A stretch of DNA of 64,000 nucleotides from Cyanophora paradoxa CCMP329 (taxonomy: Eukaryota; Plantae; Glaucophyta), in contig QPMI01000134.1 of the NCBI GenBank assembly GCA_004431415.1, forward strand, positions 46,871 to 110,870, given 5' to 3'. The position numbers were made by a program, and so were the translations under genes. The notes beneath the pieces are model-generated. The model was not told the origin of the DNA and searched no databases. It saw only the letters and a program-made list of their open reading frames with translations. Position 1 is the first letter of the stretch, and each line of letters begins with the position of its first letter. Below are positions 4,938 through 39,730 of the stretch, in pieces.

Positions 4938-7900
4938 ATGGCGCAGGTGCTGTTCCTGGGCGTGGCCCGCGGCGAGGCGCACGGCGCCAAGAGGCTCGCC
5001 ACGGTGCGCGCCCCTCGTCCCAGTCTTCTATGAGATTCTTCCACAAGAGCCGCGCGTACCGCTGTTTTCATTCTATCCAGATCCAGACCGTTATTCTATC
5101 TATCGGCTCGAAGAGGGTCGCCACGGCCCGTGAGCGCGCCTACGGTCGAGGGCGAGATGAAGCTGGGCGGGGCTCGCGGTCGCTAGGGAGCTAGCCGCGC
5201 GACGCCCGACCCCCGGCTCGCTCGGGAGCCCTGCGCCCGCGCTCGCTCGCCCCCTAGCTCGCTCGCTCACGGCCCCCGAGCCGAAAGCTAGCCGGAACCC
5301 GCGGCTGCTAGAAAGGAAGCTAGCCGCCCCACGCCACGCTTGCGCGCCGCGGCCCGGCCCGCCCCGCCCCGCCCCGCCCCGGCCCCGGCCCCGGCCCGCC
5401 CCCAGGCTCGCTCGCTCGCCGGCGCCCCCCCGACCCGAGCCGACCCGAGCCGCCCCGCCCGCGCAGCCGGAGCAGACGATGTACGCGAAGGAGTACTACA
5501 AGCGGGAGGCCGCCGACGCCCTCCTCGACGTCCGCCGCGAGGTGAGCGGGCGAGGCCCAGCCTCGACGATCCGATCCGGCCCAGCCTAGCCCAGTCTAGC
5601 TAGCCCCCTTCCTAGTCTAGTCCAGCTGGGCCCCTTGTCGTAGCCTGGCTTGCTTTGGCGCCTTGCACCGCAGGTTTAGCTAGCTAAGCAGATTAGCAGG
5701 TTCTCGGACTCCTAGCAGCCACGTCTAGCTTTAAGCTCGGGACCTTAGCTTGCTTGCTTTCTTCCTAGCCACTGCATCAGCCCAAGCTGACTCTCTTTGA
5801 ACAGTTCTCGGGCGCCGATCTGCTCTGGACGGACCACGGGCCCCTCCCGGGCGAGAAGGTCAGGCCCTTACCCGCGGGCCCCTCCCCCCCGCACCCCCTC
5901 GCGATCCACTCTCCCCCGGGCCATCTTCCACGCCGTGCCGCTCCTTATGCGCTCACGCCGGATTCAAATCCGCCGGCCTCCACCCGGGCTACCTACCCAC
6001 ACCCGGGCGCCCCGCGCGCGCCCCTTACGCGCCCCTCACGCGCCCCCGCGCCCGCCCCGCCCCCCAGATCCGGCGGATGCACCGGGAGGACCCCCTCCCG
6101 AACCGGCCCCCGATCCTCAAGTCCGCCCTCATCATCCCGGTCCGTCCGCTCCGCCCGCGCCGCCCGCCCGCCCGCCCTCCCTTTCGCTCGTCTACATTAA
6201 AAGCTTCCTTAGTTTCCATTTCTATAGAGTCTCAGAAGCTTCCATAGCTATAGCTAGAGTCTCGAACAGCGTCAGCGCGCCCTCCCGGCCGGGCCCCTTG
6301 AGCAGCCAGCACGGATCATCTGATCTCTGAACTGGCGCGCAGGCGCCGGCGTGGCGGGTGGCGAACTTCCTGTGGGACCCCACGAGCCGCACAAAGTGGG
6401 ACAAGGTGCACCGGCTCCGATCGTCCTCGAATTTGATCCCTAGATTAGATCTCGTGGAGTCCGAGCCCCCTCAGCGCAGATCTCATAGATCTTAGCTAGA
6501 TTTTCCTAGCTAGCTATAGCTATCTAGCTTCCTTCCTTAGCTAAACTAACGAACTGACTTCGCACCAAGTGGGACAAGGTGCGCCGGCAGGCGGCGGGCG
6601 GGCGGCGGGCGGCCCCGCGCGAGCTAGCTCCGACCATTCTTGAATTTGATCCCTAGATTGGATTCTTTAGAAGATCCGATAGCGCAGCGCTCGTTTCCCG
6701 AGCGCCCTCAGAGTTTCCTCAGCTCAGATCCCATACATCTTAGCTCACCACTCGAGAAGACGCTTAGCTTAGCTAACTGACTCCGGTACCCCCCGCGCAG
6801 CTGGCGCTGCGGTGCGGGGTGGTGGACGAGCTGGAGCGGACGACGCGGGTCGACTACGTGGAGGAGACGAACCTGCTCCCGGGTCACCTCCCCCGCAACA
6901 TGCTCCTCGTCGCCACCGTCCAGGTGGGCGCCAGCACCCGTCTGGCTGCCGGGCTCTGGGGCGAGAGGGCGGGCGGGCGCCGGTCCCGCCGACACGGCTC
7001 CCTCTCTCTGCAGCGCGACCTGCACGCGCGCATGTTCGTGATCGCCTACCGCTCCGTCATCCACAAGAAGGGTGCTTCGCTTAACCCTGCTTCACCCTGC
7101 TTCTCTTTTTCCGCGGAGCTGCGCTGTTCTGAACCGGGGCGCGCAGTCAAGGTGGAGGGGCAGTTCATCCGAGCGCACGTCTTCAAGGGGTGCGCCGCGC
7201 GGCGGGGCGGGGCGGGGCGGGGCGGGGAGCGAGAGGGGCGGGGATACGCCGAGCGGTGGGGCGGGCGGGACGCGGCTATCGATGTCTCCCTTCCGGCGCA
7301 GCTCAGCTTTACGTCTCGACTCAGGAGCGCTAGAACAAGGGCCTTCTGACAGGGCGCGGCGCGGCGCGGCAGGGCTTCATCGTTCGGGAGGTCGACGAGC
7401 GCAGCAGCGAGCTGACGTACGTCATCCAGATGGACGTCAAGGTAGCCTACCCCCTCCTATTATTCCCCTCCCCGTGACGTCACGCCCACCGTGACGTCGC
7501 GCCACTCGATTAGGGCGTCCTATCGCGCGTCACGGCGGAACATTACTTCGCGCGGCGCATGCTGGCGCCGCAGCAGGCAGGCTTTCCCGTACCCCTCTTG
7601 TCTTCCTCCCCGCCCTTCCTCAGTGCCGCCCCCCTCCCCGCTTTGCAGATCGGGTACGCCCTTAGGATCGAGTACCTGTCCAACTGCGGGAAGGTTTGTG
7701 TACCCCGGCCGGGCTCCGCGGGCCCCGTACCCCGTCTCGCGGGCCGCGCTGACGCCCCTGGCAGTGGATCAAGGGCGGGCTCTTCCCCCCCCGCTCCCTC
7801 GTCTCTGAGTCGCGGCACATCCAGGGGGCCCTGAAGAAGGTACGAGCTGGAGCACGCTCTTGTTTGTTCCCGCGCGTTTCCTCGCTCGGGAGCTGACGGG

Positions 7901-10811
7901 TACGCGGCAAGATCCGGGGGATGAAATCGCTGGTGTCGTTCCTTCCGGGGTCCTCTTCGGGGCAGCCGTCGCCCACGGGCTCCGAGGAGGACGAGCCGGG
8001 GTACCCGCGCCCCGCCCCGCCGCACGAGGGCGCGGAGGGCGCCGGGGGGGAGGCCCCGCGGGGGGGTACGGAATCCGAGCCCCACGAGGCGGCGGCGCCC
8101 CGCGAGCCCCAGGCGGACCCCGAGAGGGCGCGCTTACCCTCCCCGGGGCCGGACGCCGACGCGCCGTCACCGCAGCCGTTGCCGGGGCCGCCCGAGTCGG
8201 CGCAGCCGTCGCGGAAAGCGGCGCGGCTCGCCGCGCCGCAGCCGCTCGACGTGGCAGGCGACCGTTCCCCCTCCCCTTCCCTCTCCTCCCCGTCGCCCGT
8301 CGCGGCGGCGGCCGGGGCCGCGCGGGCGGCCGCAGCGAAGTCGCCGCAGGGGCAGGGGCCGGCGGGCCGGCAGAGGGGCCAGCGGTCCCCCGGCCCTGGG
8401 AAGGGGGCGCCCTCGATCGGGAGCGCTGCCTCCCTAGAGGCCGCCCCCGCCTCGGACGCGGCGGGGCTCCCGGCGACCCTCAAGCCCCGCCCGCGCTGCC
8501 GCCCGCCGCCGGAGCCGGAGCCGGCGCCGGCGCCGGGTCCTCCCTCGCCGCCGCCGCCGGCGCCGCCGCGCCCCGCCCGTCAACAACGGCGGCGGCGGCG
8601 TCGGCTTCTCCCCCCGCCGCCGCCTCCGTCCCGGGCTCTCGCCCCGACTCCTTCAGCTGGCAGCAGCCGGACCAGCGGCGGCCCTCGACGAGCGACGGCC
8701 TGGCCGGCTCGAGCCTCCTCCCGCCGGGCGCTGTCATCGCCGGCATCAGGTCCGCCCGTCCGCCCGCCCGCCCGTCTGCGGGCTGCGCAGCGCCGCACAG
8801 GAGGGCTCTCTGAGCGGCGGATACTTTGATATAGAAAGCGGCACAGAAGACGATTTTCTCGCCCTCTACCTGCCCGTGACCCGCCCGCACGCAGGCGGGC
8901 GTCGACGGCGGCGAGCCTGCCGCGCACCTACTCCGGCACCTCCCTCGCATCCACCGTCCTCCTCAACCCGCCCCAAGTGAGAGAATCTGCTAAGCCTGCT
9001 CTAACCAACCCCTTCCTCTCTCTCCCCCCTCTCGAATCTTCTTCCGCCCCTCACGCCTCGGGCAGACGGCGCCGGCGGGCCCGCCGAAGCGGCCGAGCGG
9101 CCTGAGCGCCCTCCAGGTGCGCCCTTCCGAGGGGCCCCGGGCCCAAGAAGCTTGAATCTAGCCGAACCTAGGCCTAGCTGGAACTTGAGACTTGACATTC
9201 GAAGCCTAGAGAACCCAGAGAACGCCCGCCGAGGGGCCCCGGGCCCGGCCCCCCCGCCCCCCGCCCGCGCCCTCCTCCTCATCGCGGGGGCAGGCGCTGC
9301 TGGACGCGAGTCCGGTGGTCTTCGACGCGGAGGAGCTCGCCCGCGAGGAGCGCCGCCTCCGCCGCCGCCGCCGGTGCGAGCCGCCCGCCCCCGCCCCGGC
9401 CCCGCCCCGGCGCCAGGTCGTCGCTAGCTGTATCCATCTAGAGCTACTACACCGTGAATGCTAGAGAACGAGGCCTCTTCTGACGGTGCCGCGCAGGCTG
9501 GCGCGGCAGGCGGCGGCGGAGGCGCAGGCGGACGCGGAGCGCGTCGCCACGCCGGCGGCCCTGCAGCAGCTGCAGCTGCAGCACTCGGCGACGGCCCCGG
9601 GGGCGCTCGCGCCGGGCCTGGCGGGGGCGGTGGCGCAGCTCGCCGCGCGGCGCATGTCGCGGCGCATGTCCCTCATGAAGCTCGCCGAGCTCGCCGCGCA
9701 GGGCGCCGAGGTCTCCGCCTTTCTGAGGTGCCGCCCCCCTCCCTCCGGCGCGTCCGCAGAGGCTCACCTCGTTCGCCGCGGCGCAGCTCGGACGGCTCGC
9801 CGCTGCGGCAGGCGGTGGGCGGCGGCGGCGGGGCGGGCGCGTGGAGCGAGGAGAGCAGCTCGGGCAGCAGCGCGGAGGAGGCGGCCGCCAACTCGGCGCA
9901 GGAGGAGGACGAGGCCGAGGAGGAGAGAATGCGCGAGGCGCGCCGGCGGAGCCGCTGTTTGCTGTCGTTCGTTTCTGTTTGCTGTTCGCTGATGGTGGTC
10001 CCGGGCGCAGGAGACCCGCTGAACCTCACGGGCTGGGCGAACGCTCGCCAGGCCAAGAAGGCGCGGCACCGGGGGGCGGGGGCGGGGCCCGCGGCCCCCG
10101 GGCAGGAGGGCAGGGCGGCCGCCGCGGCTGCGGCGAAAGGGCCGCTCAAGTCGGGGGGGGTGGGGGCCCGCCTCTTCCGGAAGTACATGGCGGTACCCCT
10201 CCCGTCCATGCGGCTCCTGAGGGAGCGCGGCTCCCGCTCCCCCTCCCCGGACTCCCGCTCGGCCTCTCCCCCCCGGGCCCAGACCGCCGCCGGCCGCGTC
10301 CGCGTCTCTACCCCCCTCGACCCCGTCCACCAGGCGGTGCGCGTGCCCTCCTCCCCGCCTTCATCTCGTCCCCACCTTGACCAGGGTACGGCAGGCTCTG
10401 GACTTTGCGAACGCGCGGGCGGAGGCGCGGCGGCTGCGGCACGAGGCTGGCATGAGCGCGTCCGCGGGGAGCCTCTCCTTCGGCGACCTACCCCCTCCGC
10501 CCGGCGACCTCCCGCCGGGCCTCAGATACGTACCCCCACCGCGGAACAGGCGGGCGTCCACGGCGGACGGGGTACGCCGCTCCTCCGCGTCGGGCGGCGG
10601 GCGCCGGAGGAGCAGCATACTGGCGCCCGCCGGATCCGAACCGCCGCCCGCCGGCGCCGGCGCCGGGCTGGGGCCCCAGGGGCGGGGCCAGGGGCACCTC
10701 TCGGTCACGCAGTCGGCCCCCTCGCTCGGGGGCCTGGGCCTGCGCTCCGGCGCCCGCCCCGCGACGGTCCCCGCGGAGCCGCCCGCCCGCACCTGCCCCG
10801 GGGCGGCGTGA
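4938..10811 (+). CDS. Multi-exon START/SRPBCC lipid-binding-domain gene, copy A, with a long low-complexity C-terminal part (boundaries approximate; the tail may be a separate gene)
   Basis: GT-AG exons between 5467 and 7441 give PEQTMYAKEYYKREAADALLDVRRE/FSGADLLWTDHG../..ILKSALIIP/APAWRVANFLWDPTSRTKWDK/LALRCGVVDELERTTRVDYV..PRNMLLV../..IAYRSVIHKK/..FIRAHVFKG/GFIVREVDERSSELTYVIQMDVK. This matches the START pattern (R..WD, SV.H, ltYviq.D.k). Confidence 0.75.
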
Positions 10812-11307
10812 CTCTCTCTAGTACACGAGTGATCCCCGGGGGCGACGTGACTCTAGTGCGATTTCTTGCTCTTCTGTACACTATGGTTTCGTCCTTATTC
10901 TAGTTAGCGTTGAGTCTTATATATTCCGGCATCCCACTGAGCCTGCCCGGCGGCCAAACGTTAACCCGAGCCCGGATCGCGAGCCCGAGCTACCCTCGCA
11001 GTCGATCTCGCCGAAAAACATCGTACAGACAGACTCATGATCAAAGACAGACTCTTAGGCAGCTAGGACAGAACCGCTAGACAAGAATCACAATTTGGAA
11101 AGACAAAGTACGTCCAGCCGCCTGAACAATTCAACCGAATTCGAAGGGAAATTGTAGACTTTGGCGGATGCGGAGCGCGGGGCCTCGCGGAGGAGGGCTG
11201 AACCTCGGGAGCCCCGAGAGCACCCGCGGCCTCCTCGAGGAGGGAGGGAAGGGGGAGGGAAGGGCCGGGGAGGGGGGCGGGCCGGAGCCGGGCAGGCAGG
11301 CAGGCCC

Positions 11308-12925
11308 TCAGCGGCGGGCGCCCTCGTCGCAGGCCTCGAGCAGGAGCCGGAGGCTGACCCGCCGGAAGGTCGCCTCCGCGTAGTACGGGATCGCCTTGCG
11401 CGCGAAGACGAGCCGCAGGTCGGACGGGATCTCCCCCGCTGAGGGGCGATCAAATTCGGTTGGCTGGCGGGGCGGGGTGGTTCTGGGGCGGGGGCGCACG
11501 GGCGGGGAAGCGGCAGGACTTCTCGTCGTGGAGGAGGACGATGTTCTTCCCCGCCCGCGCCGCGTGCCGCACCTCGCCCAGCACGTAGTGGCTCGCCAAC
11601 ACGTCTGCGCGGCACCGTAAGATCAGGCGCCGCCAGGAACGCGGCGGCAGCCTCGCGGACCCTGGGAGATGATGAGGACGACGCTCGCGGAGGCGTCGAT
11701 GATGTTCTCGAGCCTGCGGGGCGGGGGGCCGGCCCGGGTGAGAGCGCGGCGAGCACTCCAACTCGAGAGGGGCGCACTGGTGGAGCTCGAGGCGGGAGTC
11801 GTCGGCGTCGAGGAAGACGCGGAGGCCGGGGCCGGCCTGCTCGAGCTGGAGCTTGAGGGCGAGGGCGAAGTGCCCCGCCGAGGACTGCTTGTGCGAGAGG
11901 AAGACGTCGTACTGGGCCGCTGCGGCGGGGCGTGAGGCGGAGGGGCGGAGGGGCAAACTGCTCCGGAGTGGTGCACGGACCGGGGGCCGGGGCGGCGGGG
12001 CGCGGGTCGGCGGGGCGGGCTGCGGCGGGGCGGCGGGGCACACCGCGGGGGCGGGGGCGGGGAGGGAGCGGAGGGATCCGAGGCGTTCAGGCGTTCAGAG
12101 GGGGTTGCCGCTCACGTCCAGCGTCTGCAGACGGGAGAGGCGGCCGATCTCCGGCGGCAGCGCCGCTAGCTGATTTTTCTCCACGCTCAGCTTCTGCAGG
12201 CTGGAGAGGCGGCCGATCTCCGGCGGCAGCACCGTCAGCTGGTTGCTGCTCACGAGCAGCTCCTGCAGGCTGGAGAGGCGGCCGATCTCCGGCGGCAGCG
12301 CCATCAGCTGGTTGTTGCTCACGTACAGCTCCTGCAGGGCGGCGAGGCGGCCGATCTCCGGCGGCAGCGCCGTCAGCTGGTTGCTCTGCACGTTCAGCCA
12401 CCGCAGGGCGGTGAGGCGGCCGATCTCCGGCGGCAGCGCCGTGAGCTGGTTGCCACCCACGCCCAGCGTCTCCAGGCCGGCGAGGCGGCCGATCTCCGGC
12501 GGCAGCGCCGTGAGCTGGTTGTCACCCACGCCCAGCGTCTCCAGGGCGGCGAGGCGGCCGATCTCCGGCGGCAGAGCCGTCAGCTGGTTGTCACCCACGT
12601 ACAGCGTCTGCAAAGCGGCGAGGCGGCCGATCTCCGGCGGCAGCGCCGCCAGCTGGTTGCCCTGCACGTTCAGCCACCGCAGGGCGGTGAGGCGGCCGAT
12701 CTCCGGCGGTAGCGCCGTCAGCCGGTTGTTGCTCAACCACAGCCACTCCAGGTTCGTCAGCTTGGCGAGCTCGGCCCCCGGGATGCTCGTGAGCTCGTTT
12801 CCCCAAAGCTCGAGCCAGCGGATGTTCTCGGGCCCCGCCGCCGCGATCTCCGCCGCCGGCCACTCCTCCCGATCCTTCCCCCCCAGGTCCAGCTTCCCCT
12901 CCGCCGGGATCCACTCCTTGCCCAT
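11308..12925 (-). pseudogene. LRR-TIR gene 1A: single-exon LRR head (10 x 23-aa repeats after an N-cap) plus spliced SARM1-like TIR, with an in-frame TGA between them
   Basis: The ORF 12925-12095 is LxxLxVxxNQLTALPPEIGRL repeats. Downstream exons give YDVFLSHKQSSAGHFALALKLQLEQAGPGLRVFLDADD..LENIIDASASVVLIISQDVLASHYVLGEVRHAARAGKNIVLLHD..FP..EIPSDLRLVFARKAIPY. The frame reads GNPL*TPERLGSLRSLPAPAPA before the donor. Confidence 0.85.
12100..12750 (-). repeat. 69-bp LRR coding tandem repeat
   Basis: GAGGCGGCCGATCTCCGGCGG recurs every 69 nt. The same array type lies at ~18790-19155 and ~33510-33880. Confidence 0.95.
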
Positions 12926-15389
12926 GCCTGCGGGGGCGCGCGGCCCAGAGCGAGCGATTCGAATTCGTTGGTTCTAGACCGGGATCCCCCCAGCGGCAAC
13001 TAGCAAGCAATCCAGGCCATGCGCCCGCCCGGAGGAGCGCACTTTCGACGGATCGACTTCCCGCAGAAGAGCCGAGCTTTCGGGCCCGACGGAGCCCGCC
13101 CGGTCAGAAATCCTCGCCGGTCGCGTGCTGTCTAGATCTGCTGGACGCTCGCCCGCTGCCCTGTGGAGCTGCGCGCCGGTACAAGCAAGCAATGAGCGAA
13201 CGACAGGAGCGATGCAAGAAACCCGTCGGCTTCGCACCTGCCGCGACAAACACCGCCTACACCGCCGTAACACCGAGGCCTCTGCGGCGTCGTACACGCC
13301 GTCCGAGGCCGTCCGACGCCGTCCGCGGCCGGCCGCCCGAAGCGCCGGGGTACGGGGTGCGGACGCACCTCGGGCACTGCTGCTTCCATTGCTGTGGTAC
13401 CTGTCAGCGCTGCGCATGCCTTTTCACTTCAGTACTTCCACTGCAGACTGGCAGCAGCACGCAGCCGAATCAGCAGCGAAGCTCTGGTCTCCGGCTTCGG
13501 CGACCGGGACGCGGCCGCGGGCGAGACGTCGACTCGGACCCGGCAGCCGCAGCGCTAGCGGAGGCCTATAGCTAGGCTATGGCGGATCGATATCGGAGCA
13601 CAGCGGCGGATATCGATCGGAGCACAGCGCCGGAGCACTCGCGTCGGCCGTCCTATTGGCGCTAGCTATTGAACTATTGACGCCGGCTTCGCGGACGCCA
13701 TGCCGGAGCAGAGCGCCGGCCGTCCGATTGCCAGCGCTAGCTATATATATAGCGGCCGCGCCGCGGTACCCGGTATCGCGTAGCGCTCCGATGGCCTGCA
13801 GCTGCAGCTGCAGCTGCGCGGGCTGCGGCGCGCGCGCGCGGCGGGAAACGGCGGGGCGCCTCCGCCGCAGCGCCGATTGTGAGGGCGGCGCCGGCGCCCC
13901 TATGGCTAGGGAGAGTGGCGGTCGCTAGGGAAGCGTAGCGCGAGGCGGACTCCGGGCCGGGGCAGGGCGGAGTGGCGGCCATCTAACTTAGCACATCGCG
14001 ATCGAGGCGCGAAGCGCGAGCACCCCGGGCACGCCGCCGGACCCGGCCCCTCCCCCTCTCCCTCCGAGACTCCGCGCCCGGAGGAGAGAGGGCGCCCGCC
14101 CCGTACCCCTCCCGCCGGCCCCTCTTCTTCTCGGGACCAGGGCCCGCCTCGCCACACCGTACCCCTTTGTCCCCAAACCCCCGCTTACCCCCTCGCCTCG
14201 CCCCCCCCTCCCCCCTCGCCTCGCCCCACGCCCTCGCCTCGCCCCACGCCCTCGCCTCGCCCCACGCCCTCGCCCGCAGATCGCAGGCTTGTGGCGCCGG
14301 CCCCCGCGCCTCCCGCAGGCCTCGCTGCCCGCTCTCCCCCCGCCGCCCCGGGCCGCCCCGGGCCGCTGTCTCGGGGCCATCTGAGCCGTCTGAGCCGTCT
14401 GAGCCGTCCCGCCCCGGCTCTCCCCGGCCGCCCTCCCTCCCCCCTGCCTTTTCCTGTCCCTCTCGCTGTCCCGCCCCGGCCCGCCTCTCGATCTACGCTC
14501 CACCTCTCTTCGCTCACTTCCGCCGGCCCTCTTCGCTTTCAGCCCCCTCGAGGCTCGCCCGTTTAGCTCCCGACCTCCCAGCTGCAGTCCCACGCAGCCT
14601 TTCGGGATTTCCCCCCAAGCTGCCTCGTCTCCGAGTCGGCGCCTCGACTGAATGTAGCGGATCCAGATCCTCCCACGGAACCCCCCGGGCCCTCTAGATC
14701 CCCCCCCCCCACCCCCCTCCCCCCCCCTCCACGCCGCCTCCGGATCCTGCACGGGCCCGGAGCCTCGGAGGCGACGCGACTCCCTTGCTCTTTATTCTGT
14801 ATACCGTACTATGTTCTTGTACATGTCCTTATTCCGAAGTTCTAGTTGTGTTTTAAGCCTATATATTCTAATCGCGCCTTGTAATTACTCTAGTTGTATT
14901 CTAGATCTGACTCCGGATCCGTGACAGCGCATGCCGCAGTGCAGCCTCGAGATCCGAGAGGTGAACCTGCGAAGCTCTCTGCCGCAGTGCCACAGCTCCA
15001 CTGCGGCACTGCAATTGCTCTGCGCCGGTCCCGGGGACGCTCATGACTCAGCCTGCAGCTGGGGGGTGTGTGATCCGATCCACTGGCCATGGGCCATGAT
15101 CATCGGATGCTCAGCCTGGCAGCTGCAGCCTGGCAGCGGTCAGCTGCAGATCACGATCGCTGCCAGGCCGATCATGAGTCATGAACACGATCCGATGCCA
15201 TGATGATCAGCTGCAGCTGCAGCTCCGAGGCTCGGGATCCTCAGCTATTATTCTAGATATCGTTGACTGTTTCATGATCATGATCATGATTAGCTGCATG
15301 CCCGGATAGCCCAGGTCGGCCCTCGAGCTTGGAGGCTTCCCTTTCTTCCTTCCCTTCCTTCCAATAACACTTCGCGGACACTGTCCTGC

Positions 15390-15570
15390 CTACTTCCGCT
15401 TGGCGCCGGCGGGGGGCGTCTTGCGGGCCACCTCCGAGCGGCTCGCCGGCCGCGTGGGGGCCGCCTCCTTCGGCGGCTCGGGCTCCGCTGGCTTGGCCGC
15501 CTCCGCCGGGGGCGCCGGCGGCGGCGGCGTCTCCGCGCCGGCTGCGACCGGACCGGAGGCGCGCGCGGTT
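15390..15570 (-). pseudogene. Orphan 3' gene fragment (Pro/Ala/Glu-rich, ends PAGAKRK*); second copy at ~37408-37585
   Basis: Coding-like GC-rich stretch cut at its 5' end by AT-rich sequence. Confidence 0.4.
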
Positions 15571-16383
15571 AATTTAACATCTCGGTATACGTACTTGTAA
15601 ATATTCGTGCATGTGTCGCATGCAAGATTATCGTGCATGCGGAGCTAGATAGTGCAGCCTTCGTGCTGCTAGTTGCTAGTGCAGCCTACGTGCTGCTAGG
15701 GCCGACGTCGGCGTCAGTACGCCTCGGCCACCGCTTATTATAGCTACTACGGGTACGCCGGGCCTGTCCGGGTACAGATCACTCTTAGGGATACACTGTT
15801 CTAGAGAATACTACAGAGCGATAGCGATCCCTCGCGATCCCACGCGTCCCGCCGAGCCCAGGGTCGGCAGGTCGCATCCCCGCGTGCCTACACACTAATC
15901 CCGCACGCGACAGGCGCCATCCTGCCGGGAACTGAATCTTGAAGGGTCGCATCTTGCGACACCAGGTCCGATCGCTGCGCCCCCGGCCTCGCCGCGCGTG
16001 CGCCGCGTCGCCAGTAGTGCGTAGTGTGTGTCCGCATCAGCCCACAGTAAGCGGAACGCATAGTTCCGCCGAAAAGTGGGAGCCGCGTTCCGGTATACGG
16101 TTCTGCGTGCTGCACGGGGCGATCCGTCGTCCTGAGCCTGACTGCTCGCCGGCTTCGTGCCGTGCCGCCGGCCTCGCGCCGAGCCGCCGAAGTTCCCCGC
16201 AAGGGCAACTTTGAGCCATCGCCAATCCTAAGCCCGAGGGCCTGGATTGTGCACCGGTGTGCTGCGTAAGCAGCATATCGTCGCCTGTGAAGTCGGAATC
16301 TCGCGGTTCGCGCGAGATCCGGCATCAAAAGAGCTTCGTGCTCAAATTTGATCTGTATTGAAAGTGGTCTTTGAGTGCCCGCC

Positions 16384-17304
16384 ATGTCGCGGCTCCCAAT
16401 GACTGTCACTGCGAGCATGCGCGAGTACATGATCGCTTCAAATGCGATCACTCCGGACTCCGGCATGTCCGTCCAGCAGCTCACTGCTGAGGCGCCGGCG
16501 CGCGACGAGAAAGGGCACCTTATTGTGTCCCTGCTTCCCGCGCGGCCCACGCTGCAAGAAGTGGACGCTTGGCTCGGCCAGATTGGCAACAGTGCGTCTC
16601 AGACGACGAAGTATGCCACCGAGCCCGAGCCGGGGCCCCAGGGCCCGAACTTCGCTAAGGTCGAGGCTCTCGCGGGCCACATGCTTAGCAACATGGCCCG
16701 CGGGCCAATCTCCGACCTCATCGTGCGCCGCCGCGGGCACCTTGACTCGCTCAAGGCTACACTCGCGGAGAAGCGCACCCGTGTGGCCGTGCTGGAAGCC
16801 CTCGATGAGGAGGCGCGCACGAACGAGACCGACGGTGAACTGCTCCTCCTGCAGGACACGATCCGCCGCGTCGAGGCCGAGTTTAACGCCGGCCGGGACA
16901 CGTACATGCGTGCGCCAGGCCTCAAGGCTTTCATTTTGGCGGCCGCCGCGAAGGGCCTGCCGTTTGAGTCTGAGAAGGCGATCCTGGCCCCGTTCACCGG
17001 CGAGGACCCGCTGACGTGGCTTAACTGGATCAATCCGTACCTCTGGCACACGCTGCCGCAGGGGAAAACGTACGCGGAGCACCTGCTCCACGTGCTCAAG
17101 AATGCTCTCGTGCGGCGTAAGACGGGCAACGACCCGCAGTACCGGAACTTCGACGTCCGGTCCTCAACCGTGGCTGAGCGCAATCAGTACACGATGGAGC
17201 GCTTCCGCGACGAGCTGCAGGCTCAGATCGCGCGCCAGGGCGCCGCCTCACGCCCCTTGGGGTTGAACAAAGTCATACGCCTCTCCAAGGGGGGAAGGAG
17301 TTAA
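16384..17304 (+). CDS. Intronless ~306-aa ORF, probably gag-like, of a pol-deleted LTR retroelement
   Basis: The only long intronless ORF of ordinary composition in the GC-rich block. It is helical/coiled-coil-like with an FTGEDPLTWL motif and runs straight into a PPT-like tract and an LTR-like segment. Confidence 0.5.
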   Translation: MSRLPMTVTASMREYMIASNAITPDSGMSVQQLTAEAPARDEKGHLIVSLLPARPTLQEVDAWLGQIGNSASQTTKYATEPEPGPQGPNFAKVEALAGHMLSNMARGPISDLIVRRRGHLDSLKATLAEKRTRVAVLEALDEEARTNETDGELLLLQDTIRRVEAEFNAGRDTYMRAPGLKAFILAAAAKGLPFESEKAILAPFTGEDPLTWLNWINPYLWHTLPQGKTYAEHLLHVLKNALVRRKTGNDPQYRNFDVRSSTVAERNQYTMERFRDELQAQIARQGAASRPLGLNKVIRLSKGGRS

Positions 17305-17568
17305 GGAGGAGTACGCACGTCTCCGCCCTGGAAGCGGCCCCTCCACAACCCCCCCCCCCCCCCCCCCCCCCCCGCCCCCCCGCTCTGTATTGGCTACATT
17401 AAGCCGTATTGGCGTATTGTTAATAGCCACGTTAAGCCACACACATATAAATATCTGTGGAACCTCAGGGGCCTATCATAACTCGAAGCTGAATTGGAAA
17501 GTTACCCCATTGAATCAATATATAAACAGACCAACCAACCAGACGCTCCAACTGGCTTCTCTCCAACT
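17287..17568 (+). mobile_element. Polypurine tract (17287-17298) plus a 270-bp LTR-like segment with AGTT...AACT termini
   Basis: AAGGGGGGAAGG is followed by AGTTAAGGAG. The segment contains TATAAA motifs and ends CTCTCCAACT just after the LRR-TIR2 stop. Copy at 39306-39586. No matching 5' LTR was found. Confidence 0.45.
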
Positions 17569-17584
17569 TGGCCCGCTAGCGCGG

Positions 17585-19331
17585 CTAGCGCCGCAGCAGG
17601 TCGCGCAGGCCGGCGACGAGCTCGCCGGCCGCCGCGTCCGCCGCCGCCGCCCCCTCCCCGCGCTGCATCGTCCAGTTCACCGACGCCAGCATCATCTGCC
17701 GCCGTCCGCGGATCAGGCGAGCGTGGGGCGACCAGGGGGCGGGTGGGGCGAGGCGCGCTCTGTAGTCCACCGGCAGCTCGACCGTCCTGGGGTCGACGAG
17801 CCACACTGCCGCCGAGGGTGAGGCGGGGCGGGCGCTTGCAGGGCCCCAGGGCCCGCGGCACGCACCGGGGAACTTGGGATGCGCAGCTGGTGGTGGGCGA
17901 ACTGCATCTGCGGGGGGTCAGGAACATCGTCGGCCCGAACGTGAATCGGGGGGTCGCGTCGCGCCTCGTCGTCGCAGTTGTGGGAGCGGATGTACCCCGG
18001 TGACAGGAAGCAGACATACGTCCGGCAGCGCTGCATCGCCTCCTGCGCATGCCGCGCGCCCCGCGCGCTCGGCATGCTGGAAGGCGCGAGCGGTGGGCGA
18101 CGCGCACCCCGATCTTGGCCATCCACTTCTGGCCCGCCTTGAGCTCGCGGTCGACCCTGCGCGGGGCGAGGGCGTCAGCGGTGCGGGGCGGGGGAGGGGC
18201 GAGGAGAGGGGTGGCCTTGGAGGGGGGCGAACCATATCTTGAAGCCGGCGGCCTCGAGGGCGTCGCAGTAGCGGAAGACGAGCGTCGCGTCGACGTGGGC
18301 GTAGCTGCAGGCGGCGTGAGCACCGGCAGCGTGCGGCGGGGGCCGGGACAAGCGCCTGACGAAGCAGTCCCAGGCCTTGCCGTCGGCGGCCGGCTGCAGC
18401 GGGGGCGGGTGCTGCGGGACTGCAGCAGGCGCCTGCTGGGCGCGCTGGGCGGCCGGCGGGGAGGGCGCCGCTGGGGGACGGGCTCGCGTCGGGGGAAGGG
18501 AAGCACGGGCGGGGGTACACTGACCGGGGGCCGGAGGGGCCGGGGCGGCGGGCGCAGCGGGGCGCGGGGCGGCGGGCGCAGCGGGGCGCGCGGCAGGGGC
18601 GGCGGGCTGCGGTGGCGGGTGAGTGCGCGGTGGAGGCCGAGGGGTGAGGGGCTGGGAGTGGGGCGCACCGCGGGGGCGGGGAGGGAGCGGAGGTAGGGCA
18701 CGACGGCGGCGCACTGGGCTGTACCGTCGTACATGTTGTCATTAACGGCGCGGCGGACAAGCTCGGGCCACGAGTCCACGACGGGGTTGCCGCTCACGTA
18801 CAGCTCCTGCAGGGCGGCGAGGCGGCCGATCTCCGGCGGCAGCGCCGTGAGCTGGTTGTCACTCACGCCCAGCGTCTCCAGGCCGGCGAGGCGGCCGATC
18901 TCCGGCGGCAGCGCCGTGAGCTGGTTGTCACCCACGCCCAGCTCCTTCAGGGCGGCGAGGCGGCCGATCTCCGGCGGCAGAGCCGTCAGCTGGTTGTCAC
19001 CCACGTACAGCGTCTGCAAAGCGGCGAGGCGGCCGATCTCCGGCGGCAGCGCCGCCAGCTGGTTGCCCTGCACGTTCAGCCACCGCAGGGCGGTGAGGCG
19101 GCCGATCTCCGGCGGTAGCGCCGTCAGCCGGTTGTTGCTCAACCACAGCTTCTCCAGGTTCGTCAGCTTCGCGAGCTCGGCCCCCGGGATGCGCGTGAGC
19201 TTGTTATAGCCGAGGTCGAGCTCGCGGATGTTCGCCGGCCCCGCTCGCGCGATCTCCGCCGCCGGCCACTCCGTCCGCCCCTCCTTCTCCAGGTCCAGCT
19301 TCCCCTCCGCCGGGATCCACCCCTTGCCCAT
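17585..19331 (-). CDS. LRR-TIR gene 2: LRR head (6 repeats plus C-cap) plus spliced bacterial-type TIR_2 domain
   Basis: ATG at 19331 (MGKGWIPAEGKLDL..). Exons give WDCFVSYAHVDATLVFRYCDALEAAGFKIWVDRELKAGQKWMAKIGEAMQRCRTYVCFLSPGYIRSHNCDDEMQFAHHQLRIP..LRDLLRR*, using GC-AG introns at 18305-18355 and 17908-17964. Confidence 0.88.
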
Positions 19332-26717: not shown

Positions 26718-29700
26718 ATGGCGCACGTGCTGTTCCTCGGCGTGGACCGCGGCGAGGCGCACGGCGCCAAGAAGGTCGCCACGGTGCGCGCCCCTCGTCT
26801 CATTCTTCTATAAGATTCTTTTACAAGAGCCGCGAGTATTGCTGTTTTTATTCTATCTAGATCTAGACCGTTATTCTATCTATCGGCTCGAAGAGGGTCG
26901 CCACGGCGCGTGAGCGCGCCTACGGTCGAGGGCGAGATGAAGCTGGGCGGGGCTCGCGGTCGCTAGGGAGCTAGCCGCGCGACGCCCGACCCCCGGCTCG
27001 CTCGGGAGCCCTGCGCCCGCGGTCGCTCGCCCCCGAGCTCCGCTCGCGGCCCCCGAGCCGAAAGCTAGGCGGAGCCCGCGGCTGCTAGAAAGGAAGCTAG
27101 CCGCCCCACGCCACGCCTGCGCGCCGCCCTGCCCGCCCCGCCCCGCCCGGCCCCCGGCTCGCTCGCTCGCCCGCGCCCCTCGAGCCGAGCCGCCGCATGG
27201 GGCGGGCCCGGGCGCAGCCGGAGCAGACGATGTACGCGAAGGAGTACTACAAGCGGGAGGCCGCCGACGCCCTCCTCGACGTCCGCCGCGAGGTGAGCGA
27301 GACCCAGTCTCGATGATCCGATCTGGCCCAGACTAGTCTAGCTAGGCCTATCCAGTCCGGTCCTCCGGTCTAGTCCAGCTGGGCCCCTTGTCTTAGCTTG
27401 CCTAGCATAGCATCTGCCTCTCTTTAGGCCCTAGCTGACTCCTCCTCGCAGTTCTCGGGTGCCGATCTGCTCTGGACGGACCACGGGCCGCTTCCGGGCG
27501 AGAAGGTCAGGCCCTTACCCGCGGGCCTCTACCCCCCGCCCCCTCGCGATCCACTCGCCCCCGGGCCATCTTCCACGCCGTGCCGCTCCTTATGCGCTCA
27601 CGTCGGACTCTAAACCGCGGGCCTCCACCCGGGCTACCTACCCACGCCCGGGCGTCCCTCACGCCACTCACGCCGCCCCTCACGCGCCCCCGCGCCCGCC
27701 CCGCCCCCCAGATCCGGCGGATGCACCGGGAGGACCCCCTCCCGAACCGGCCCCCGATCCTCAAGTCCGCCCTCGTCATCCCGGTCCGTCCGTCCGCCCG
27801 CCCGCCCCGCGCGCCCCGCCCGCCCGCCCGCCTCGTCCTTCCGCTCGCCTCTACATTATATGCTTCCATAGCTTCCATTTAAGCTGGGCTCGGGCGCGCG
27901 TGCCGCGTCAGCGCACCCTCCCGGCCGGGCCGGGCCCCTTAGGTAGCCAGCGCGGGTCTCTGAGCGCGCGCGCAGGCGCCGGCGTGGCGGACGGCGAACT
28001 TCCTGTGGGACCCCACGAGCCGCACCAAGTGGGACAAGGTGCACCGGCTCCGACCATCCTTGAATTTGATCCCTAGATTAGATCTCGTAGAAGATCCGAT
28101 AGCGGAGCGCTCGTTTTCCGAGCGCCCTCAGAGTTTTAGCTTCCTAGCTAGCTTACTTCCCAAGCTCATCTAACCAATTGTTCTCCGGCCCCCCCTCGCC
28201 CGCTCGCCCGCGCGCGCAGCTGGCGCTGCGGTGCGGGGTGGTGGACGAGCTGGAGCGGACGACGCGGGTCGACTACGTCGAGGAGACGAACCTGCTCCCG
28301 GGTCACCTCCCCCGCAACATGGTCCTCGTCGCCACCGTCCAGGTGGGCGCCAGCACCCGTCTGGCTGCCGGGCTCTGGGGCGAGAGGGCGGGCGGGCGCC
28401 GGTCCCGCCGACACGGCTCCCTCTCTCTGCAGCGCGACCTGCACGCGCGCATGTTCGTGATCGCCTACCGCTCCGTCATCCACAAGAAGGGTGCTTCGCT
28501 TAACCCTGCTTCACCCTGCTTCTCTTTTTCCGCGGAGCTGCGCTGTTCTGAACCGGGGCGCGCAGTCAAGGTGGAGGGGCAGTTCATCCGAGCGCACGTC
28601 TTCAAGGGGGTGCGCCGCGCGGCGGGGCGGGGCGGGGCGGGGCGGGGAGCGAGAGGGGGCGGGGATACGCCGAGCGGTGGGGCGGGGCGGGACGCGGCTA
28701 TCGATGTCTCCCTTCCGGCGCAGCTCAGCTTTACGTCTCGACTCAGGAGCGCTAGAACAAGGGCCTTCTGACAGGGCGCGGCGCGGCGCGGCAGGGCTTC
28801 ATCGTTCGGGAGGTCGACGAGCGCAGCAGCGAGCTGACGTACGTCATCCAGATGGACGTCAAGGTAGCCTACCCCCTCCTATTATTCCCCTCCCCGTGAC
28901 GTCACGCCCACCGTGACGTCGCGCCACTCGATTAGGGCGTCCTATCGCGCGTCACGGCGGAACATTACTTCGCGCGGCGCATGCTGGCGCCGCAGCAGGC
29001 AGGCTTTCCCGTACCCCTCTTGTCTTCCTCCCCGCCCTTCCTCAGTGCCGCCCCCCTCCCCGCTTTGCAGATCGGGTACGCCCTTAGGATCGAGTACCTG
29101 TCCAACTGCGGGAAGGTTTGTGTACCCCGGCCGGGCTCCGCGGGCCCCGTACCCCGTCTCGCGGGCCGCGCTGACGCCCCTGGCAGTGGATCAAGGGCGG
29201 GCTCTTCCCCCCCCGCTCCCTCGTCTCTGAGTCGCGGCACATCCAGGGGGCCCTGAAGAAGGTACGAGCTGGAGCACGCTCTTGTTTGTTCCCGCGCGTT
29301 TCCTCGCTCGGGAGCTGACGGGTACGCGGCAAGATCCGGGGGATGAAATCGCTGGTGTCGTTCCTTCCGGGGTCCTCTTCGGGGCAGCCGTCGCCCACGG
29401 GCTCCGAGGAGGACGAGCCGGGGTACCCGCGCCCCGCCCCGCCGCACGAGGGCGCGGAGGGCGCCGGGGGGGAGGCCCCGCGGGGGGGTACGGAATCCGA
29501 GCCCCACGAGGCGGCGGCGCCCCGCGAGCCCCAGGCGGACCCCGAGAGGGCGCGCTTACCCTCCCCGGGGCCGGACGCCGACGCGCCGTCACCGCAGCCG
29601 TTGCCGGGGCCGCCCGAGTCGGCGCAGCCGTCGCGGAAAGCGGCGCGGCTCGCCGCGCCGCAGCCGCTCGACGTGGCAGGCGACCGTTCCCCCTCCCCTT

Positions 29701-32222: not shown

Positions 32223-32717
32223 CTCTCTCTAGTACACGAGTGATCCCCGGGGGCGACGTGACTCTAGTGCGATTTCTTGCTCTTCTGTACACTATGGTTT
32301 CGTCCTTATTCTAGTTAGCGTTGAGTCTTATATATTCCGGCATCCCACTGAGCCTGCCCGGCGGCCAAACGTTAACCCGAGCCCGGATCGCGAGCCCGAG
32401 CTACCCTCGCAGTCGATCTCGCCGAAAAACATCGTACAGACAGACTCATGATCAAAGACAGACTCTTAGGCAGCTAGGACAGAACCGCTAGACAAGAATC
32501 ACAATTTGGAAAGACAAAGTACGTCCAGCCGCCTGAACAATTCAACCGAATTCGAAGGGAAATTGTAGACTTTGGCGGATGCGGAGCGCGGGGCCTCGCG
32601 GAGGAGGGCTGAACCTCGGGAGCCCCGAGAGCACCCGCGGCCTCCTCGAGGAGGGAGGGAAGGGGGAGGGAAGGGCCGGGGAGGGGGCGGGCCGGAGCCG
32701 GGCAGGCAGGCAGGCCC

Positions 32718-34056
32718 TCAGCGGCGGGCGCCCTCGTCGCAGGCCTCGAGCAGGAGCCGGAGGCTGACCCGCCGGAAGGTCGCCTCCGCGTAGTACGGGA
32801 TCGCCTTGCGCGCGAAGACGAGCCGCAGGTCGGACGGGATCTCCCCCGCTGAGGGGCGATCAAATTCGGTTGGCTGGCGGGGCGGGGTGGTTCTGGGGCG
32901 GGGGCGCACGGGCGGGGAAGCGGCAGGACTTCTCGTCGTGGAGGAGGACGATGTTCTTCCCCGCCCGCGCCGCGTGCCGCACCTCGCCCAGCACGTAGTG
33001 GCTCGCCAACACGTCTGCGCGGCACCGTAAGATCAGGCGCCGCCAGGAACGCGGCGGCAGCCTCGCGGACCCTGGGAGATGATGAGGACGACGCTCGCGG
33101 AGGCGTCGATGATGTTCTCGAGCCTGCGGGGCGGGGGGCCGGCCCGGGTGAGAGCGCGGCGAGCACTCCAACTCGAGAGGGGCGCACTGGTGGAGCTCGA
33201 GGCGGGAGTCGTCGGCGTCGAGGAAGACGCGGAGGCCGGGGCCGGCCTGCTCGAGCTGGAGCTTGAGGGCGAGGGCGAGGTGGCCGGCCGAGGTCGGCTA
33301 GTGGAAGAGGAAGACGTCGTACTGGGCCGCTGCGGCGGGGCGTGAGGCGGAGGGGCGGAGGGGCAAACTGCTCCGGAGTGGTGCACGGACCGGGGGCCGG
33401 GGCGGCGGGGCGCGGGTCGGCGGGGCGGGCTGCGGCGGGGCGGCGGGGCACACCGCGGGGCGGGGCGGGGAGGGAGCGGAGGGATCCGAGGCGTTCAGGC
33501 GTTCAGAGGGGTTGCCGCTCACGTCCAGCGTCTGCAGACGGGAGAGGCGGCCGATCTCCGGCGGCAGCGCCGCTAGCTGATTTTTCTCCACGCTCAGCTT
33601 CTGCAGGCTGGAGAGGCGGCCGATCTCCGGCGGCAGCACCGTCAGCTGGTTGCTGCTCACGAGCAGCTCCTGCAGGCTGGAGAGGCGGCCGATCTCCGGC
33701 GGCAGCGCCATCAGCTGGTTGTTGCTCACGTACAGCTCCTGCAGGGCGGCGAGGCGGCCGATCTCCGGCGGCAGCGCCGTCAGCTGGTTGCCCTGCACGT
33801 TCAGCCACCGCAGGGCGGTGAGGCGGCCGATCTCCGGCGGTAGCGCCGTCAGCCGGTTGTTGCTCAACCACAGCCACTCCAGGTTCGTCAGCTTGGCGAG
33901 CTCGGCCCCCGGGATGCTCGTGAGCTCGTTTCCCCAAAGCTCGAGCCAGCGGATGTTCTCGGGCCCCGCCGCCGCGATCTCCGCCGCCGGCCACTCCTCC
34001 CGATCCTTCCCCCCCAGGTCCAGCTTCCCCTCCGCCGGGATCCACTCCTTGCCCAT
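32718..34056 (-). pseudogene. LRR-TIR gene 1B: 6 LRR repeats (four fewer than 1A), SARM1-like TIR with a TAG in its first strand region
   Basis: The LRR array is 276 bp shorter than in 1A. The TIR begins YDVFLFH*PTSAGHLA instead of YDVFLSHKQSSAGHFA. Confidence 0.8.
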
Positions 34057-35154
34057 GCCTGCGGGGGCGCGCGGCCCAGAGCGAGCGATTCGAATTCGTT
34101 GGTTCTAGACCGGGATCCCCCCAGCGGCAACTAGCAAGCAATCCAGGCCATGCGCCCGCCCGGAGGAGCGCACTTTCGACGGATCGACTTCCCGCAGAAG
34201 AGCCGAGCTTTCGGGCCCGACGGAGCCCGCCCGGTCAGAAATCCTCGCCGGTCGCGTGCTGTCTAGATCTGCTGGACGCTCGCCCGCTGCCCTGTGGAGC
34301 TGCGCGCCGGTACAAGCAAGCAATGAGCGAACGACAGGAGCGATGCAAGAAACCCGTCGGCTTCGCACCTGCCGCGACAAACACCGCCTACACCGCCGTA
34401 ACACCGAGGCCCTCTGCGGCGTCGTACACGCCGTCCGAGGCCGTCCGACGCCGTCCGCGGCCGGCCGCCCGAAGCGCCGGGGTACGGGGTGCGGACGCAC
34501 CTCGGGCACTGCTGCTTCCATTGCTGTGGTACCTGTCAGCGCTGCGCATGCCTTTTCACTTCAGTACTTCCCACTGCAGACTGGCAGCAGCACGCAGCCG
34601 AATCAGCAGCGAAGCTCTGGTCTCCGGCTTCGGCGACCGGGACGCGGCCGCGGGCGAGACGTCGACTCGGACCCGGCAGCCGCAGCGCTAGCGGAGGCCT
34701 ATAGCTAGGCTATGGCGGATCGATATCGGAGCACAGCGGCGGATATCGATCGGAGCACAGCGCCGGAGCACTCGCGTCGGCCGTCCTATTGGCGCTAGCT
34801 ATTGAACTATTGACGCCGGCTTCGCGGACGCCATGCCGGAGCAGAGCGCCGGCCGTCCGATTGCCAGCGCTAGCTATATATATAGCGGCCGCGCCGCGGT
34901 ACCCGGTATCGCGTAGCGCTCCGATGGCCTGCAGCTGCAGCTGCAGCTGCGCGGGCTGCGGCGCGCGCGCGCGGCGGGAAACGGCGGGGCGCCTCCGCCG
35001 CAGCGCCGATTGTGAGGGCGGCGCCGGCGCCCCTATGGCTAGGGAGAGTGGCGGTCGCTAGGGAAGCGTAGCGCGAGGCGGACTCCGGGCCGGGGCAGGG
35101 CGGAGTGGCGGCCATCTAACTTAGCACATCGCGATCGAGGCGCGAAGCGCGAGC

Positions 35155-36028
35155 GGGGAAGGATTTGCATTAGCACACAACAACAACTTCTAGGAGTTTC
35201 ACATCGCCCAATTTATCTCTCCGACTAGATAACACTGAGGACCGTCGAGTGCTGTGCTCTGTCTAAGTGATGAGAAATTCTATCTACGTCCTATATCTAC
35301 AAATGGGGCGAGAGGCCGAAAGATACACCTGCAGAAAAAGCCCAGGCCCTACGCAGACCGATGAAGGCAAACAGAGCGCGCAAACACCCTCCAGACGTGG
35401 AAGTCCGCCCTAGGGAAGACCCACGTATAGCGGAGGGCAAGAAAGGCACTACGCCTGACAAGCAAAGGTCGACGGAAAGACCTGAGCTTTCCTGCATGTG
35501 GAAAAGACCCGCCATCTAGCGACTCGACTGCGAGGAGATTAGGAGCGGAACGAAATGAGAAAGCGCCGATGAGCTCCAGCGCCAAGCAAGGGTGCGGGGG
35601 CCGGGCGCCGTCCGCGTGTTAACGGAACACGTCGCCGCGCCAGTGTGCCACGCCAAGGCTGCCGCGCGTTCACTAACGCTGCGGCGCGTGGCGGCGTGGG
35701 CTTTGCGCGAAAGCCGGCCGACTTTGCGGCCAGCCGACGTCGCCGCGGCCGCTCCCGCGGCGCTCCTCGCCGCGCCGGAGACAACATAGAAGCAATCCCC
35801 TAACGCGCGCGCTCCTGAATCTCCTACGGAATGGCCGGCAACGAGGCCCGCCGCCGAGAACGCCAACTCGACACCCATTTCGCGCCGCCGCTCCGCGCGC
35901 CAGCCGCCTACTTCACGCTGGTCACGCTGAGCGACAGCGGCGGCGCCATGGACGGGCCGCAGCCAGCCGCGCGCCGACGCGGTGGGAAATTTTCTCGTAC
36001 CCGTCTCCGATTTTGGCGAAGCGCGAGC
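35155..36028. other. 874-bp segment present only in the second duplicate, bounded by a 13-bp direct repeat
   Basis: GCGAAGCGCGAGC occurs at 35142-35154 and 36016-36028, but only once (14009-14021) in the first duplicate. Confidence 0.9.
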
Positions 36029-39602: not shown

Positions 39603-39730
39603 CTAGCGCCGCAGCAGGTCGCGCAGGCCGGCGACGAGCTCGCCGGCCGCCGCGTCCGCCGCCGCCGCCCCCTCCCCGCGCTGCATCGTCCAGTTCACCG
39701 ACGCCAGCATCATCTGCCGCCGTCCGCGGA
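39603..39730 (-). pseudogene. Last exon of a second LRR-TIR2 copy, cut off by the insertion at 39731
   Basis: Identical to 17585-17712 (MMLASVNWTMQRGEG..LRDLLRR*). Confidence 0.9.

What the first reader, a model, noticed from the sequence alone, without database searches (positions are those of the whole stretch)
11308..19331. Modular LRR-TIR receptors: one sensor exon family spliced onto two different TIR effectors
Seen: genes 1 and 2 share upstream DNA, the N-cap MGK(E/G)WIPAEGKLDL and LRR cassettes. Both LRR exons end LRSLPAPA|GT in phase 0. Downstream, gene 1 has a SARM1-like TIR and gene 2 a bacterial TIR_2-like TIR, with different sequences and intron positions. Neither has a signal peptide, TM helix or NB-ARC/NACHT. 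Both keep a Glu at the position expected for the catalytic residue (VLGEV at 11573-11575, CDDEM at 17965-17967). Known: SARM1, plant and bacterial TIRs are NADases that need this Glu. Inference: a cytosolic innate-immune receptor family in a microbial eukaryote, in which an LRR sensor exon is swapped among effector domains.
Basis: partly seen in the sequence, partly recalled or inferred. Interest (0 to 1): 0.85.

Follow-up and report, generated by a model that had tools for sequence, protein, structure and literature searches.

The report
Algal LRR-TIR genes sharing one sensor
The alga Cyanophora paradoxa has an apparently undescribed gene family that attaches one variable leucine-rich-repeat module to several unrelated immune-type TIR domains; the family is real, but one of the two genes shown here has a stop codon before its TIR part, and no function has been tested.

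Summary
The window is Cyanophora paradoxa contig tig00000532. The family is real. At least 17 stored gene models carry one N-cap/LRR module, ending in TIR-A (SARM1-like fold), TIR-B (TIR_2/TLR-like), SAM-TIR, RING or nothing. The three TIR types are only 18-21% identical, and LRR trees do not follow TIR type. Genes 1 and 2 share a 202-nt identical LRR tract, which points to gene conversion between neighbours with different effectors. Exposed LRR positions vary strongly.

Corrections: gene 1 has an in-frame TGA (12097-12095) 17 codons before the claimed donor. Its ending is LRSLPAPAPA, and RNA-type contigs run unspliced through the last 61 nt of the claimed intron. A third, broken copy lies at 32718-34056. 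Gene 2 looks intact apart from a probable one-base assembly loss, and its TIR introns are spliced. The genes stop being alike in the second (phase-1) intron, not at the phase-0 donor. Both glutamates are confirmed, but TIR-A lacks the SARM1 Y568, G601 and H685 equivalents. No LRR-TIR joint was seen in reads. I found no paper on the family; the scan noted it before on other contigs (s1-515157, s1-511102).

The parts
12095..12925 (-). Gene 1 exon 1 ORF: 56-aa N-cap, 9 full 23-aa LRR units and a last partial unit, ending in TGA; 276 aa
12095..12097 (-). In-frame TGA in gene 1. It stands where relatives with the short C-cap (P0008, P0014) have 11 residues; the frame before and after it is the ancestral frame
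12044..12094 (-).
11912..12043 (-). Claimed intron of gene 1: 132 nt, open and in frame if not spliced; its last 61 nt are present in RNA-type contigs
11308..11911 (-). TIR-A of gene 1 in four exons: 11911-11778, 11713-11661, 11604-11500, 11438-11308
   Evidence: exon frames; sister model P0002 vs SARM1 E 2.5e-5, fold Z 19.5
11573..11575 (-). Glu codon of TIR-A; aligns with SARM1 E642
12928..13042 (-). 5' UTR intron (GT..AG, 115 nt) ending 2 nt before the ATG; spliced in a family member's RNA contig
   Evidence: (joint 12928-13044)
12542..12743 (-). 202-nt tract identical to gene 2 19149-18948 (LRR units 1-4): conversion tract
18669..19331 (-). Gene 2 exon 1: N-cap, 5 full LRR units, last unit and full C-cap ending LRSLPAPA; phase-0 GT donor
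   Evidence: EukProt model P0006
18948..19149 (-). Gene 2 side of the identical tract
18525..18606 (-). Gene 2 Pro/Ala linker exon; phase-1 donor whose first 11 nt resemble gene 1 at 11980-11970
17586..18470 (-). Rest of linker and TIR-B of gene 2 in seven exons: 18470-18356, 18304-18233, 18156-18108, 18042-17965, 17907-17866, 17805-17759, 17695-17586; three GC donors
   Evidence: last two introns spliced in RNA-type runs; Pfam TIR_2 5e-18
17965..17967 (-). Glu codon of TIR-B; invariant in 8 TIR-B sequences, aligns with the Glu of TLR15/6/1 TIR
17876..17878 (-). C-run one base shorter than in the RNA contig and in P0007/P0008/P0020; probable assembly loss
32718..34056 (-). Gene 3, duplicate of gene 1 (EukProt g1893, P0001): four LRR units fewer, three fewer bases around the C-cap, TAG in the first TIR exon
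39604..39730 (-). Last exon of a duplicate of gene 2; the rest is missing, and unrelated low-GC DNA follows

Best explanation
This is part of a Cyanophora-specific family of soluble sensor-effector genes that is born and dies quickly. SHOWN: one cassette (5' UTR intron, N-cap, single-exon array of 69-nt LRR units, C-cap, Pro/Ala linker) stands in front of at least three TIR types of about 20% mutual identity, and a RING. LRR arrays change by gain or loss of whole units and by conversion between neighbouring genes with different effectors. Amino-acid change is concentrated on the exposed beta-strand positions. Gene 2 is the likely intact member here; genes 1 and 3 are damaged TIR-A copies, and gene 1 is still transcribed. 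INFERRED: the cassette was joined to TIR modules that already existed in the genome, by recombination in or near the phase-1 intron after the linker. INFERRED MECHANISM (about 0.5): the LRR concave face binds a foreign, fast-changing ligand in the cytosol, such as a viral or parasite protein. With no NTPase to drive assembly, clustering on a repeated ligand, or through SAM-bearing family members, brings the TIRs together on their flexible linkers. The assembled TIRs cleave NAD+, giving either depletion with cell arrest or death, or an ADPR-type signal.
For: Family and domain content. TIR types 18-21% identical, and LRR-bearing TIR-B nested among LRR-less TIR-B genes (99/98). LRR trees reject TIR-A monophyly (p-AU 0.026; 0.003 on repeats 1-3) and TIR-B monophyly on repeats 1-3 (0.038). 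A 202-nt identical tract against an N-cap that differs at 26 of 168 nt. Quartet: the N-cap groups by TIR type 10:0, units 1-2 group by contig 3:1. Exposed positions have entropy 2.2-3.2 bits; pN/pS is 4.5 (2.6-8.9) there and 0.66 elsewhere. Spliced RNA contigs for TIR-B and the UTR intron. Glu aligned to SARM1 E642 and to the TLR Glu. TIR-A model closest to TIR-1/SARM1, Z 19.5/19.1.
Against: No read shows an LRR-TIR joint: gene 2's junction lay outside the 6,000 letters allowed, and the output tables were cut. Paralogues on other contigs are known only as automatic gene models. TIR-A has His, Ser and Ala where SARM1 has Y568, G601 and H685; mutating those lowers SARM1 activity (PMC8266388). 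TIR-B's best PDB sequence hits are TLR and MyD88 TIRs, and some Glu-bearing TIRs are inactive. The pN/pS figures compare repeat units that are not independent. Polishing of near-identical copies could inflate the identical tract. No ligand, pathogen or phenotype is known.
Confidence: 0.6

Rival explanations
1. Same modular family, but the TIRs of genes 1 and 2 are non-enzymatic adaptors. They would pass the signal by TIR-TIR assembly to an enzymatic partner (the LRR-SAM-TIR members) or to the genome's membrane TIR receptors.
For: TIR-B's best PDB hits are TLR15/6/1 and MyD88. TIR-A lacks three SARM1 active-site or interface residues. Only the SAM-TIR class is strongly SARM1-like (E 5e-29). Glu-bearing TLR2, IL-1R9 and IL-1R10 TIRs showed no activity.
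Against: The Glu is invariant in all 8 TIR-A-like and all 8 TIR-B sequences. TIR-B keeps the SY, the BB-loop Asp and the AG. Many eukaryotic TIRs, TLR4 included, make cADPR.
Confidence: 0.2
2. The family is a by-product of an unstable, repeat-rich region: a mobile promoter-plus-LRR cassette lands in front of various genes, and most fusions decay without an immune role.
For: Three of the four copies in the window are broken or cut. The region is segmentally duplicated. Several models elsewhere look truncated or frameshifted (P0005, P0009, P0011).
Against: Partners are nearly all TIR, SAM-TIR or RING. LRR scaffold positions and the TIR core are conserved while exposed positions diversify. TIR-B transcripts are spliced in two studies.
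Confidence: 0.1
3. Gene 1 is in fact a working LRR-TIR-A gene. Either the TGA is an assembly error, or a cryptic donor in the last LRR (exon end 12133, phase 1) joins the acceptor at 11919 and skips the stop, as the EukProt model of the sister gene P0002 does.
For: The assembly loses single C/G bases often (table 4). Gene 3 is open across this stretch in another frame. The phases of 12133 and 11919 match. The TIR-A exons of gene 1 are unbroken and transcribed.
Against: Frames on both sides of the TGA match the ancestral C-cap, so a single-base error does not explain it. The same 8-nt repeat stands in both copies. RNA contigs of two studies carry 11972-11912, which that splice would remove.
Confidence: 0.2

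Closest known systems
SARM1 / C. elegans TIR-1 (ARM-SAM-SAM-TIR NADase)
   Same: TIR-A's best sequence and fold matches (E 2.5e-5; Z 19.5, rmsd 2.0, 134 aligned); Glu at E642; cytosolic sensor plus C-terminal TIR. The family's SAM-TIR class matches SARM1 at 5e-29.
   Different: LRR in place of ARM; no SAM in genes 1 and 2; TIR-A only 25-28% identical and lacking Y568, G601 and H685 equivalents.
Toll-like receptors (LRR-TM-TIR)
   Same: Domain order LRR then TIR; TIR-B's best PDB hits are TLR15/6/1.
   Different: No hydrophobic N-terminus or TM helix, no cysteine caps; a Pro/Ala linker instead. LRR-TM-TIR was reported unique to choanozoans in PMC6040629.
Plant TIR-NB-ARC-LRR receptors
   Same: Cytosolic, LRR plus TIR, clustered, birth and death, variable exposed LRR residues (own knowledge; architecture in PMC7075850).
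   Different: No NTPase, reverse domain order, only weak similarity to plant TIRs (E 0.065-0.7).
Brown algal LRR-ROCO and NB-ARC-TPR candidate receptors (PMC3341825)
   Same: Algal candidate immune genes with high turnover and diversifying repeat domains.
   Different: There each repeat is its own exon and is shuffled, and the effector is a GTPase or NB-ARC. Here the whole array is one exon and the effector varies.
LRR-Roc-COR-TIR proteins
   Same: N-terminal 23-residue LRRs and a C-terminal TIR in a soluble protein (own knowledge).
   Different: No Roc-COR hit; only about 70 low-complexity residues lie between LRR and TIR.

Membership tests
Toll-like receptor | Transmembrane helix between LRR and TIR | tested here: not met
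   Highest 19-aa hydropathy 0.95 in the gene 2 model; 1.57 in TIR-A lies on a TIR core strand
Toll-like receptor | N-terminal signal peptide | tested here: not met
   Charged N-cap directly after the ATG, no hydrophobic stretch; no dedicated predictor was available
NLR / TNL | Central NB-ARC or NACHT NTPase | tested here: not met
   No such Pfam hit in 10 models; no room for one between exons
SARM1 family | ARM repeats and tandem SAM before the TIR | tested here: not met
   Genes 1-3 have LRR and no SAM; one SAM in P0004, P0013, P0014
SARM1 family | SARM1-clade TIR | tested here: inconclusive
   TIR-A nearest to SARM1/TIR-1 by sequence and fold but at 25-28% identity; no tree with reference TIRs could be built; TIR-B is not SARM1-like
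Enzymatic (NADase) TIR | Catalytic Glu on helix C | tested here: met
   Aligned to SARM1 E642 and the TLR Glu; invariant in both alignments
Enzymatic (NADase) TIR | Other SARM1 active-site and interface residues (Y568, D594, G601, H685) | tested here: inconclusive
   TIR-A keeps only the D594 equivalent; TIR-B keeps Tyr, Asp and a BB-loop Gly; other TIR clades differ at these sites anyway
Enzymatic (NADase) TIR | Glu-dependent NAD+ cleavage | not testable with these tools
   Needs an assay
ROCO (LRR-Roc-COR) | Roc-COR tandem | tested here: not met
Exon-shuffled LRR receptors of brown algae | One repeat per exon | tested here: not met
   All repeats in one exon
   Gene 1: TGA, not met as assembled. 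Gene 2: open across the junction by model, junction not covered by the one read call

The most novel reading that the evidence does not exclude
A single-celled alga from the earliest-branching part of the plant lineage runs a combinatorial cytosolic immune system without NLRs. Ligand-binding LRR tracts are passed by gene conversion among genes wired to different outputs (NAD+ depletion, cADPR-type signal, ubiquitin ligase), so a new specificity can be coupled to several responses; truncated copies such as gene 1 may act as decoys.
Probability: 0.3. Interest if true: 0.85.

Novelty: new variant of a known kind. Interest (0 to 1): 0.56.

Why it matters
How free-living microbial eukaryotes sense intracellular pathogens is largely open; a 2026 survey states there is no evidence yet for TIR-driven cell death in microeukaryotes (PMC13142454). 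A short, soluble LRR-linker-TIR protein with neither NTPase nor membrane anchor would be a minimal receptor design that a glaucophyte reached independently of TLRs and NLRs. The TIR domains can be assayed directly in E. coli. The parts and the logic are known; the arrangement, and the exchange of sensor tracts across effector classes, are what I could not find described.

Tried and rejected
Exon-by-exon Pfam scan by reference: only the LRR exons hit. The TIR exons are short, and several of my references were out of frame, so those blanks mean nothing. The whole-library profile search was swamped by long generic LRR proteins; a local rescan gave one more family member, P0025. It therefore says nothing on whether the N-cap exists outside Cyanophora. 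The TIR-B model (pLDDT 74, 8 sequences) gave only generic flavodoxin-like matches and was not used. One search was in the wrong frame and was redone. Paper searches found nothing on this family, nor did the supplements held for two 2026 TIR surveys; subscription papers are not covered. Rejected: TLR, NLR, ROCO and SARM1 membership; TIR-A and TIR-B as sisters; the phase-0 donor as the swap point; leaky read-through of the TGA (no evidence).

Full report
Source. A search with gene 1's N-cap returned 14 proteins, all EukProt models with tig-type names. P0006 (tig00000532_g1888) is gene 2 and P0001 (tig00000532_g1893) is a third copy in the window. These names belong to the Cyanophora paradoxa genome (own knowledge; earlier scan notes agree). 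No returned model corresponds to gene 1.

What is in the window. Three genes start with the same N-cap on the minus strand, at 12925, 19331 and 34056. Gene 3 and the last exon of a second gene 2 come from a segmental duplication (6627-14021 vs 28047-35154; 14009-17712 vs 36016-39730). Gene 2 has nine coding exons: N-cap, LRR and C-cap in exon 1, a Pro/Ala linker exon, then the rest of the linker and TIR-B. As assembled it shifts frame in a C-run at 17878-17876. An RNA contig reads RIPKFP there, as do three paralogues, and the assembly loses single C or G bases at many other places. I take this as an assembly error, though the contig could come from a paralogue.

Gene 1 is not as described. Its LRR frame stops at TGA 12097-12095, 17 codons before the GT. 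Relatives with the short C-cap (P0008, P0014) have 11 residues where gene 1 has the stop, and the residues after it (TPERL..LRSL) match theirs in the same frame. That fits a small in-frame deletion rather than a one-base error. Gene 3 has the same stretch with three fewer bases and is open there in another frame, but it has a TAG in its first TIR exon. The read tables were cut and do not show the TGA site itself, so it is not confirmed by reads. Two RNA-type runs (X15, X17) have contigs matching gene 1 from about 11830 to 11972 with 1 and 0 mismatches, at depth 12-15 against a background of 2-3. A cryptic donor at 12133 with the acceptor at 11919 would skip the stop in phase, as the model of the sister gene P0002 does, but these contigs speak against it being the only form.

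Expression. X15 and X17 behave as RNA. They show the joint across gene 2's last intron (depth 44 and 110, none in the DNA run), and X15 has a loose end matching the exon before. X17 shows a spliced 5' UTR intron ending 2 nt before the ATG. No LRR-to-TIR joint appears in the rows shown. Gene 2's junction could not be included within the 6,000-letter limit. Spliced models were searched exon by exon by reference; the joined step was left out, and stored models were used for domain, structure and tree work.

The family. At least 17 stored models carry the module. Their C-terminal parts are TIR-A (P0001-3, P0015, P0016, P0025), TIR-B (P0006-8, P0010, P0020), SAM plus a third TIR (P0004, P0013, P0014), RING (P0012) or nothing clear. 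TIR-A models with a full C-cap and full TIR exist on another contig (P0015, P0016), so the pairing does not rest on gene 1. The three TIR types are 18-21% identical; A and B align only as profiles (probability 77%), with the Glu in register. TIR-A is nearest to SARM1/TIR-1 and has a 43%-identical relative fused to Vps62 in a metagenome. TIR-B is nearest to TLR and MyD88 TIRs in the PDB and to TIR_2 clusters of bacteria and eukaryotes alike, so 'bacterial' is not shown; TIR_2 does not define a subtype (PMC13142454). TIR-B also occurs without LRRs (P0021-23), and the LRR-bearing copies nest among those. This suggests the cassette was added to an existing TIR; the inference depends on the root, which sits on long branches.

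Where the swap lies. Genes 1 and 2 stay alike past LRSLPAPA, through the linker, to about 11 nt into the phase-1 intron. The SAM-TIR model P0014 reads through a stretch matching gene 2's phase-1 intron up to its acceptor. So the shared unit is UTR, LRR exon and linker, and effectors begin at or after the phase-1 intron. This rests on three genes, only two of them as DNA.

LRR exchange. Genes 1 and 2 differ at 26 of 168 nt in the N-cap but at 7 of 345 nt in units 1-5, with 202 nt identical. Gene 1's units 1-3 match gene 2 at 68 of 69 residues and its own sister P0002 at 61. In the quartet of A and B genes from two contigs, N-cap sites group by TIR type (10:0) and sites in units 1-2 group by contig (3:1). 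AU tests reject TIR-A as one LRR clade (p 0.026 with the N-cap, 0.003 on units 1-3) and TIR-B on units 1-3 (0.038), though not with the N-cap (0.51). The trees are short and mostly unresolved, and assembly polishing could add to the identity. Among 78 units, 77 are distinct and variation peaks at exposed positions 4, 5, 7, 9 and 10; in the window's 13 distinct DNA units pN/pS is 4.5 there and 0.66 elsewhere (uncorrected, units not independent).

Mechanism. Shown: anatomy, modularity, variability, transcription of TIR-B and of part of gene 1, both Glu codons. Inferred: ligand binding by the LRR face, clustering, TIR self-assembly and NAD+ cleavage. SARM1's TIR gains activity on assembly and needs E642, while Y568A, H685A, D594A and G601P lower it (PMC8266388). 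A Glu alone does not guarantee activity (10.64898/2026.04.20.719644).

Verdict. The family is real, modular and apparently unpublished, and the scan has noted it on other contigs. This locus adds evidence of LRR tract exchange between effector classes, but it holds one probably intact gene among four copies. New variant of a known kind; interest 0.56.

Noticed in passing
window 41900-51900: Low-GC element bounded by inverted arrays of a 156-157-nt unit, with two Ulp1-type peptidase C48 ORFs (42850-43656, 44038-44712) and an F-box-like ORF (48949-49566); the duplicate of gene 2 is cut at 39730 just before this low-GC region.
   Followed up: partly
window 11830-17825: The assembly lacks single C or G bases in runs at many places (13278, 13437, 16194, 17245, 17734-17811 and others), so frameshifts in this genome need checking against reads.
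   Followed up: partly
window 16375-17304 (+), copy at 38393-39499: 309-aa ORF between genes 1 and 2 with no Pfam hit and little RNA coverage.
   Followed up: no
P0013 and P0023: The same SAM type (42 of 64 identical) stands before the SARM1-like TIR in an LRR gene and before TIR-B in an LRR-less gene: a second layer of shuffling.
   Followed up: partly
P0015, P0025: Models with two or three complete N-cap/LRR/C-cap modules in tandem before TIR-A; real tandem modules or merged models.
   Followed up: no
window 33305-33279 vs 11895-11869: Eight substitutions in 27 nt in gene 3's first TIR exon, in otherwise near-identical DNA; the variant resembles P0003, suggesting conversion from another TIR-A copy.
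   Followed up: partly
P0017 (JGI contig, 1017 nt): TIR-A-like domain fused to a Vps62 domain in an unnamed metagenome contig.
   Followed up: no
window 14630-14829: Summed contig depth 33,250 in the DNA run and 46,493 in run X20; probably a G-rich or high-copy repeat.
   Followed up: no
window 18355, 17964, 17758: Three of gene 2's eight introns use GC donors; the last is supported by an RNA joint.
   Followed up: partly
P0010, P0020: Two TIR-B models end in CSVQ, a possible prenylation motif that gene 2 lacks.
   Followed up: no
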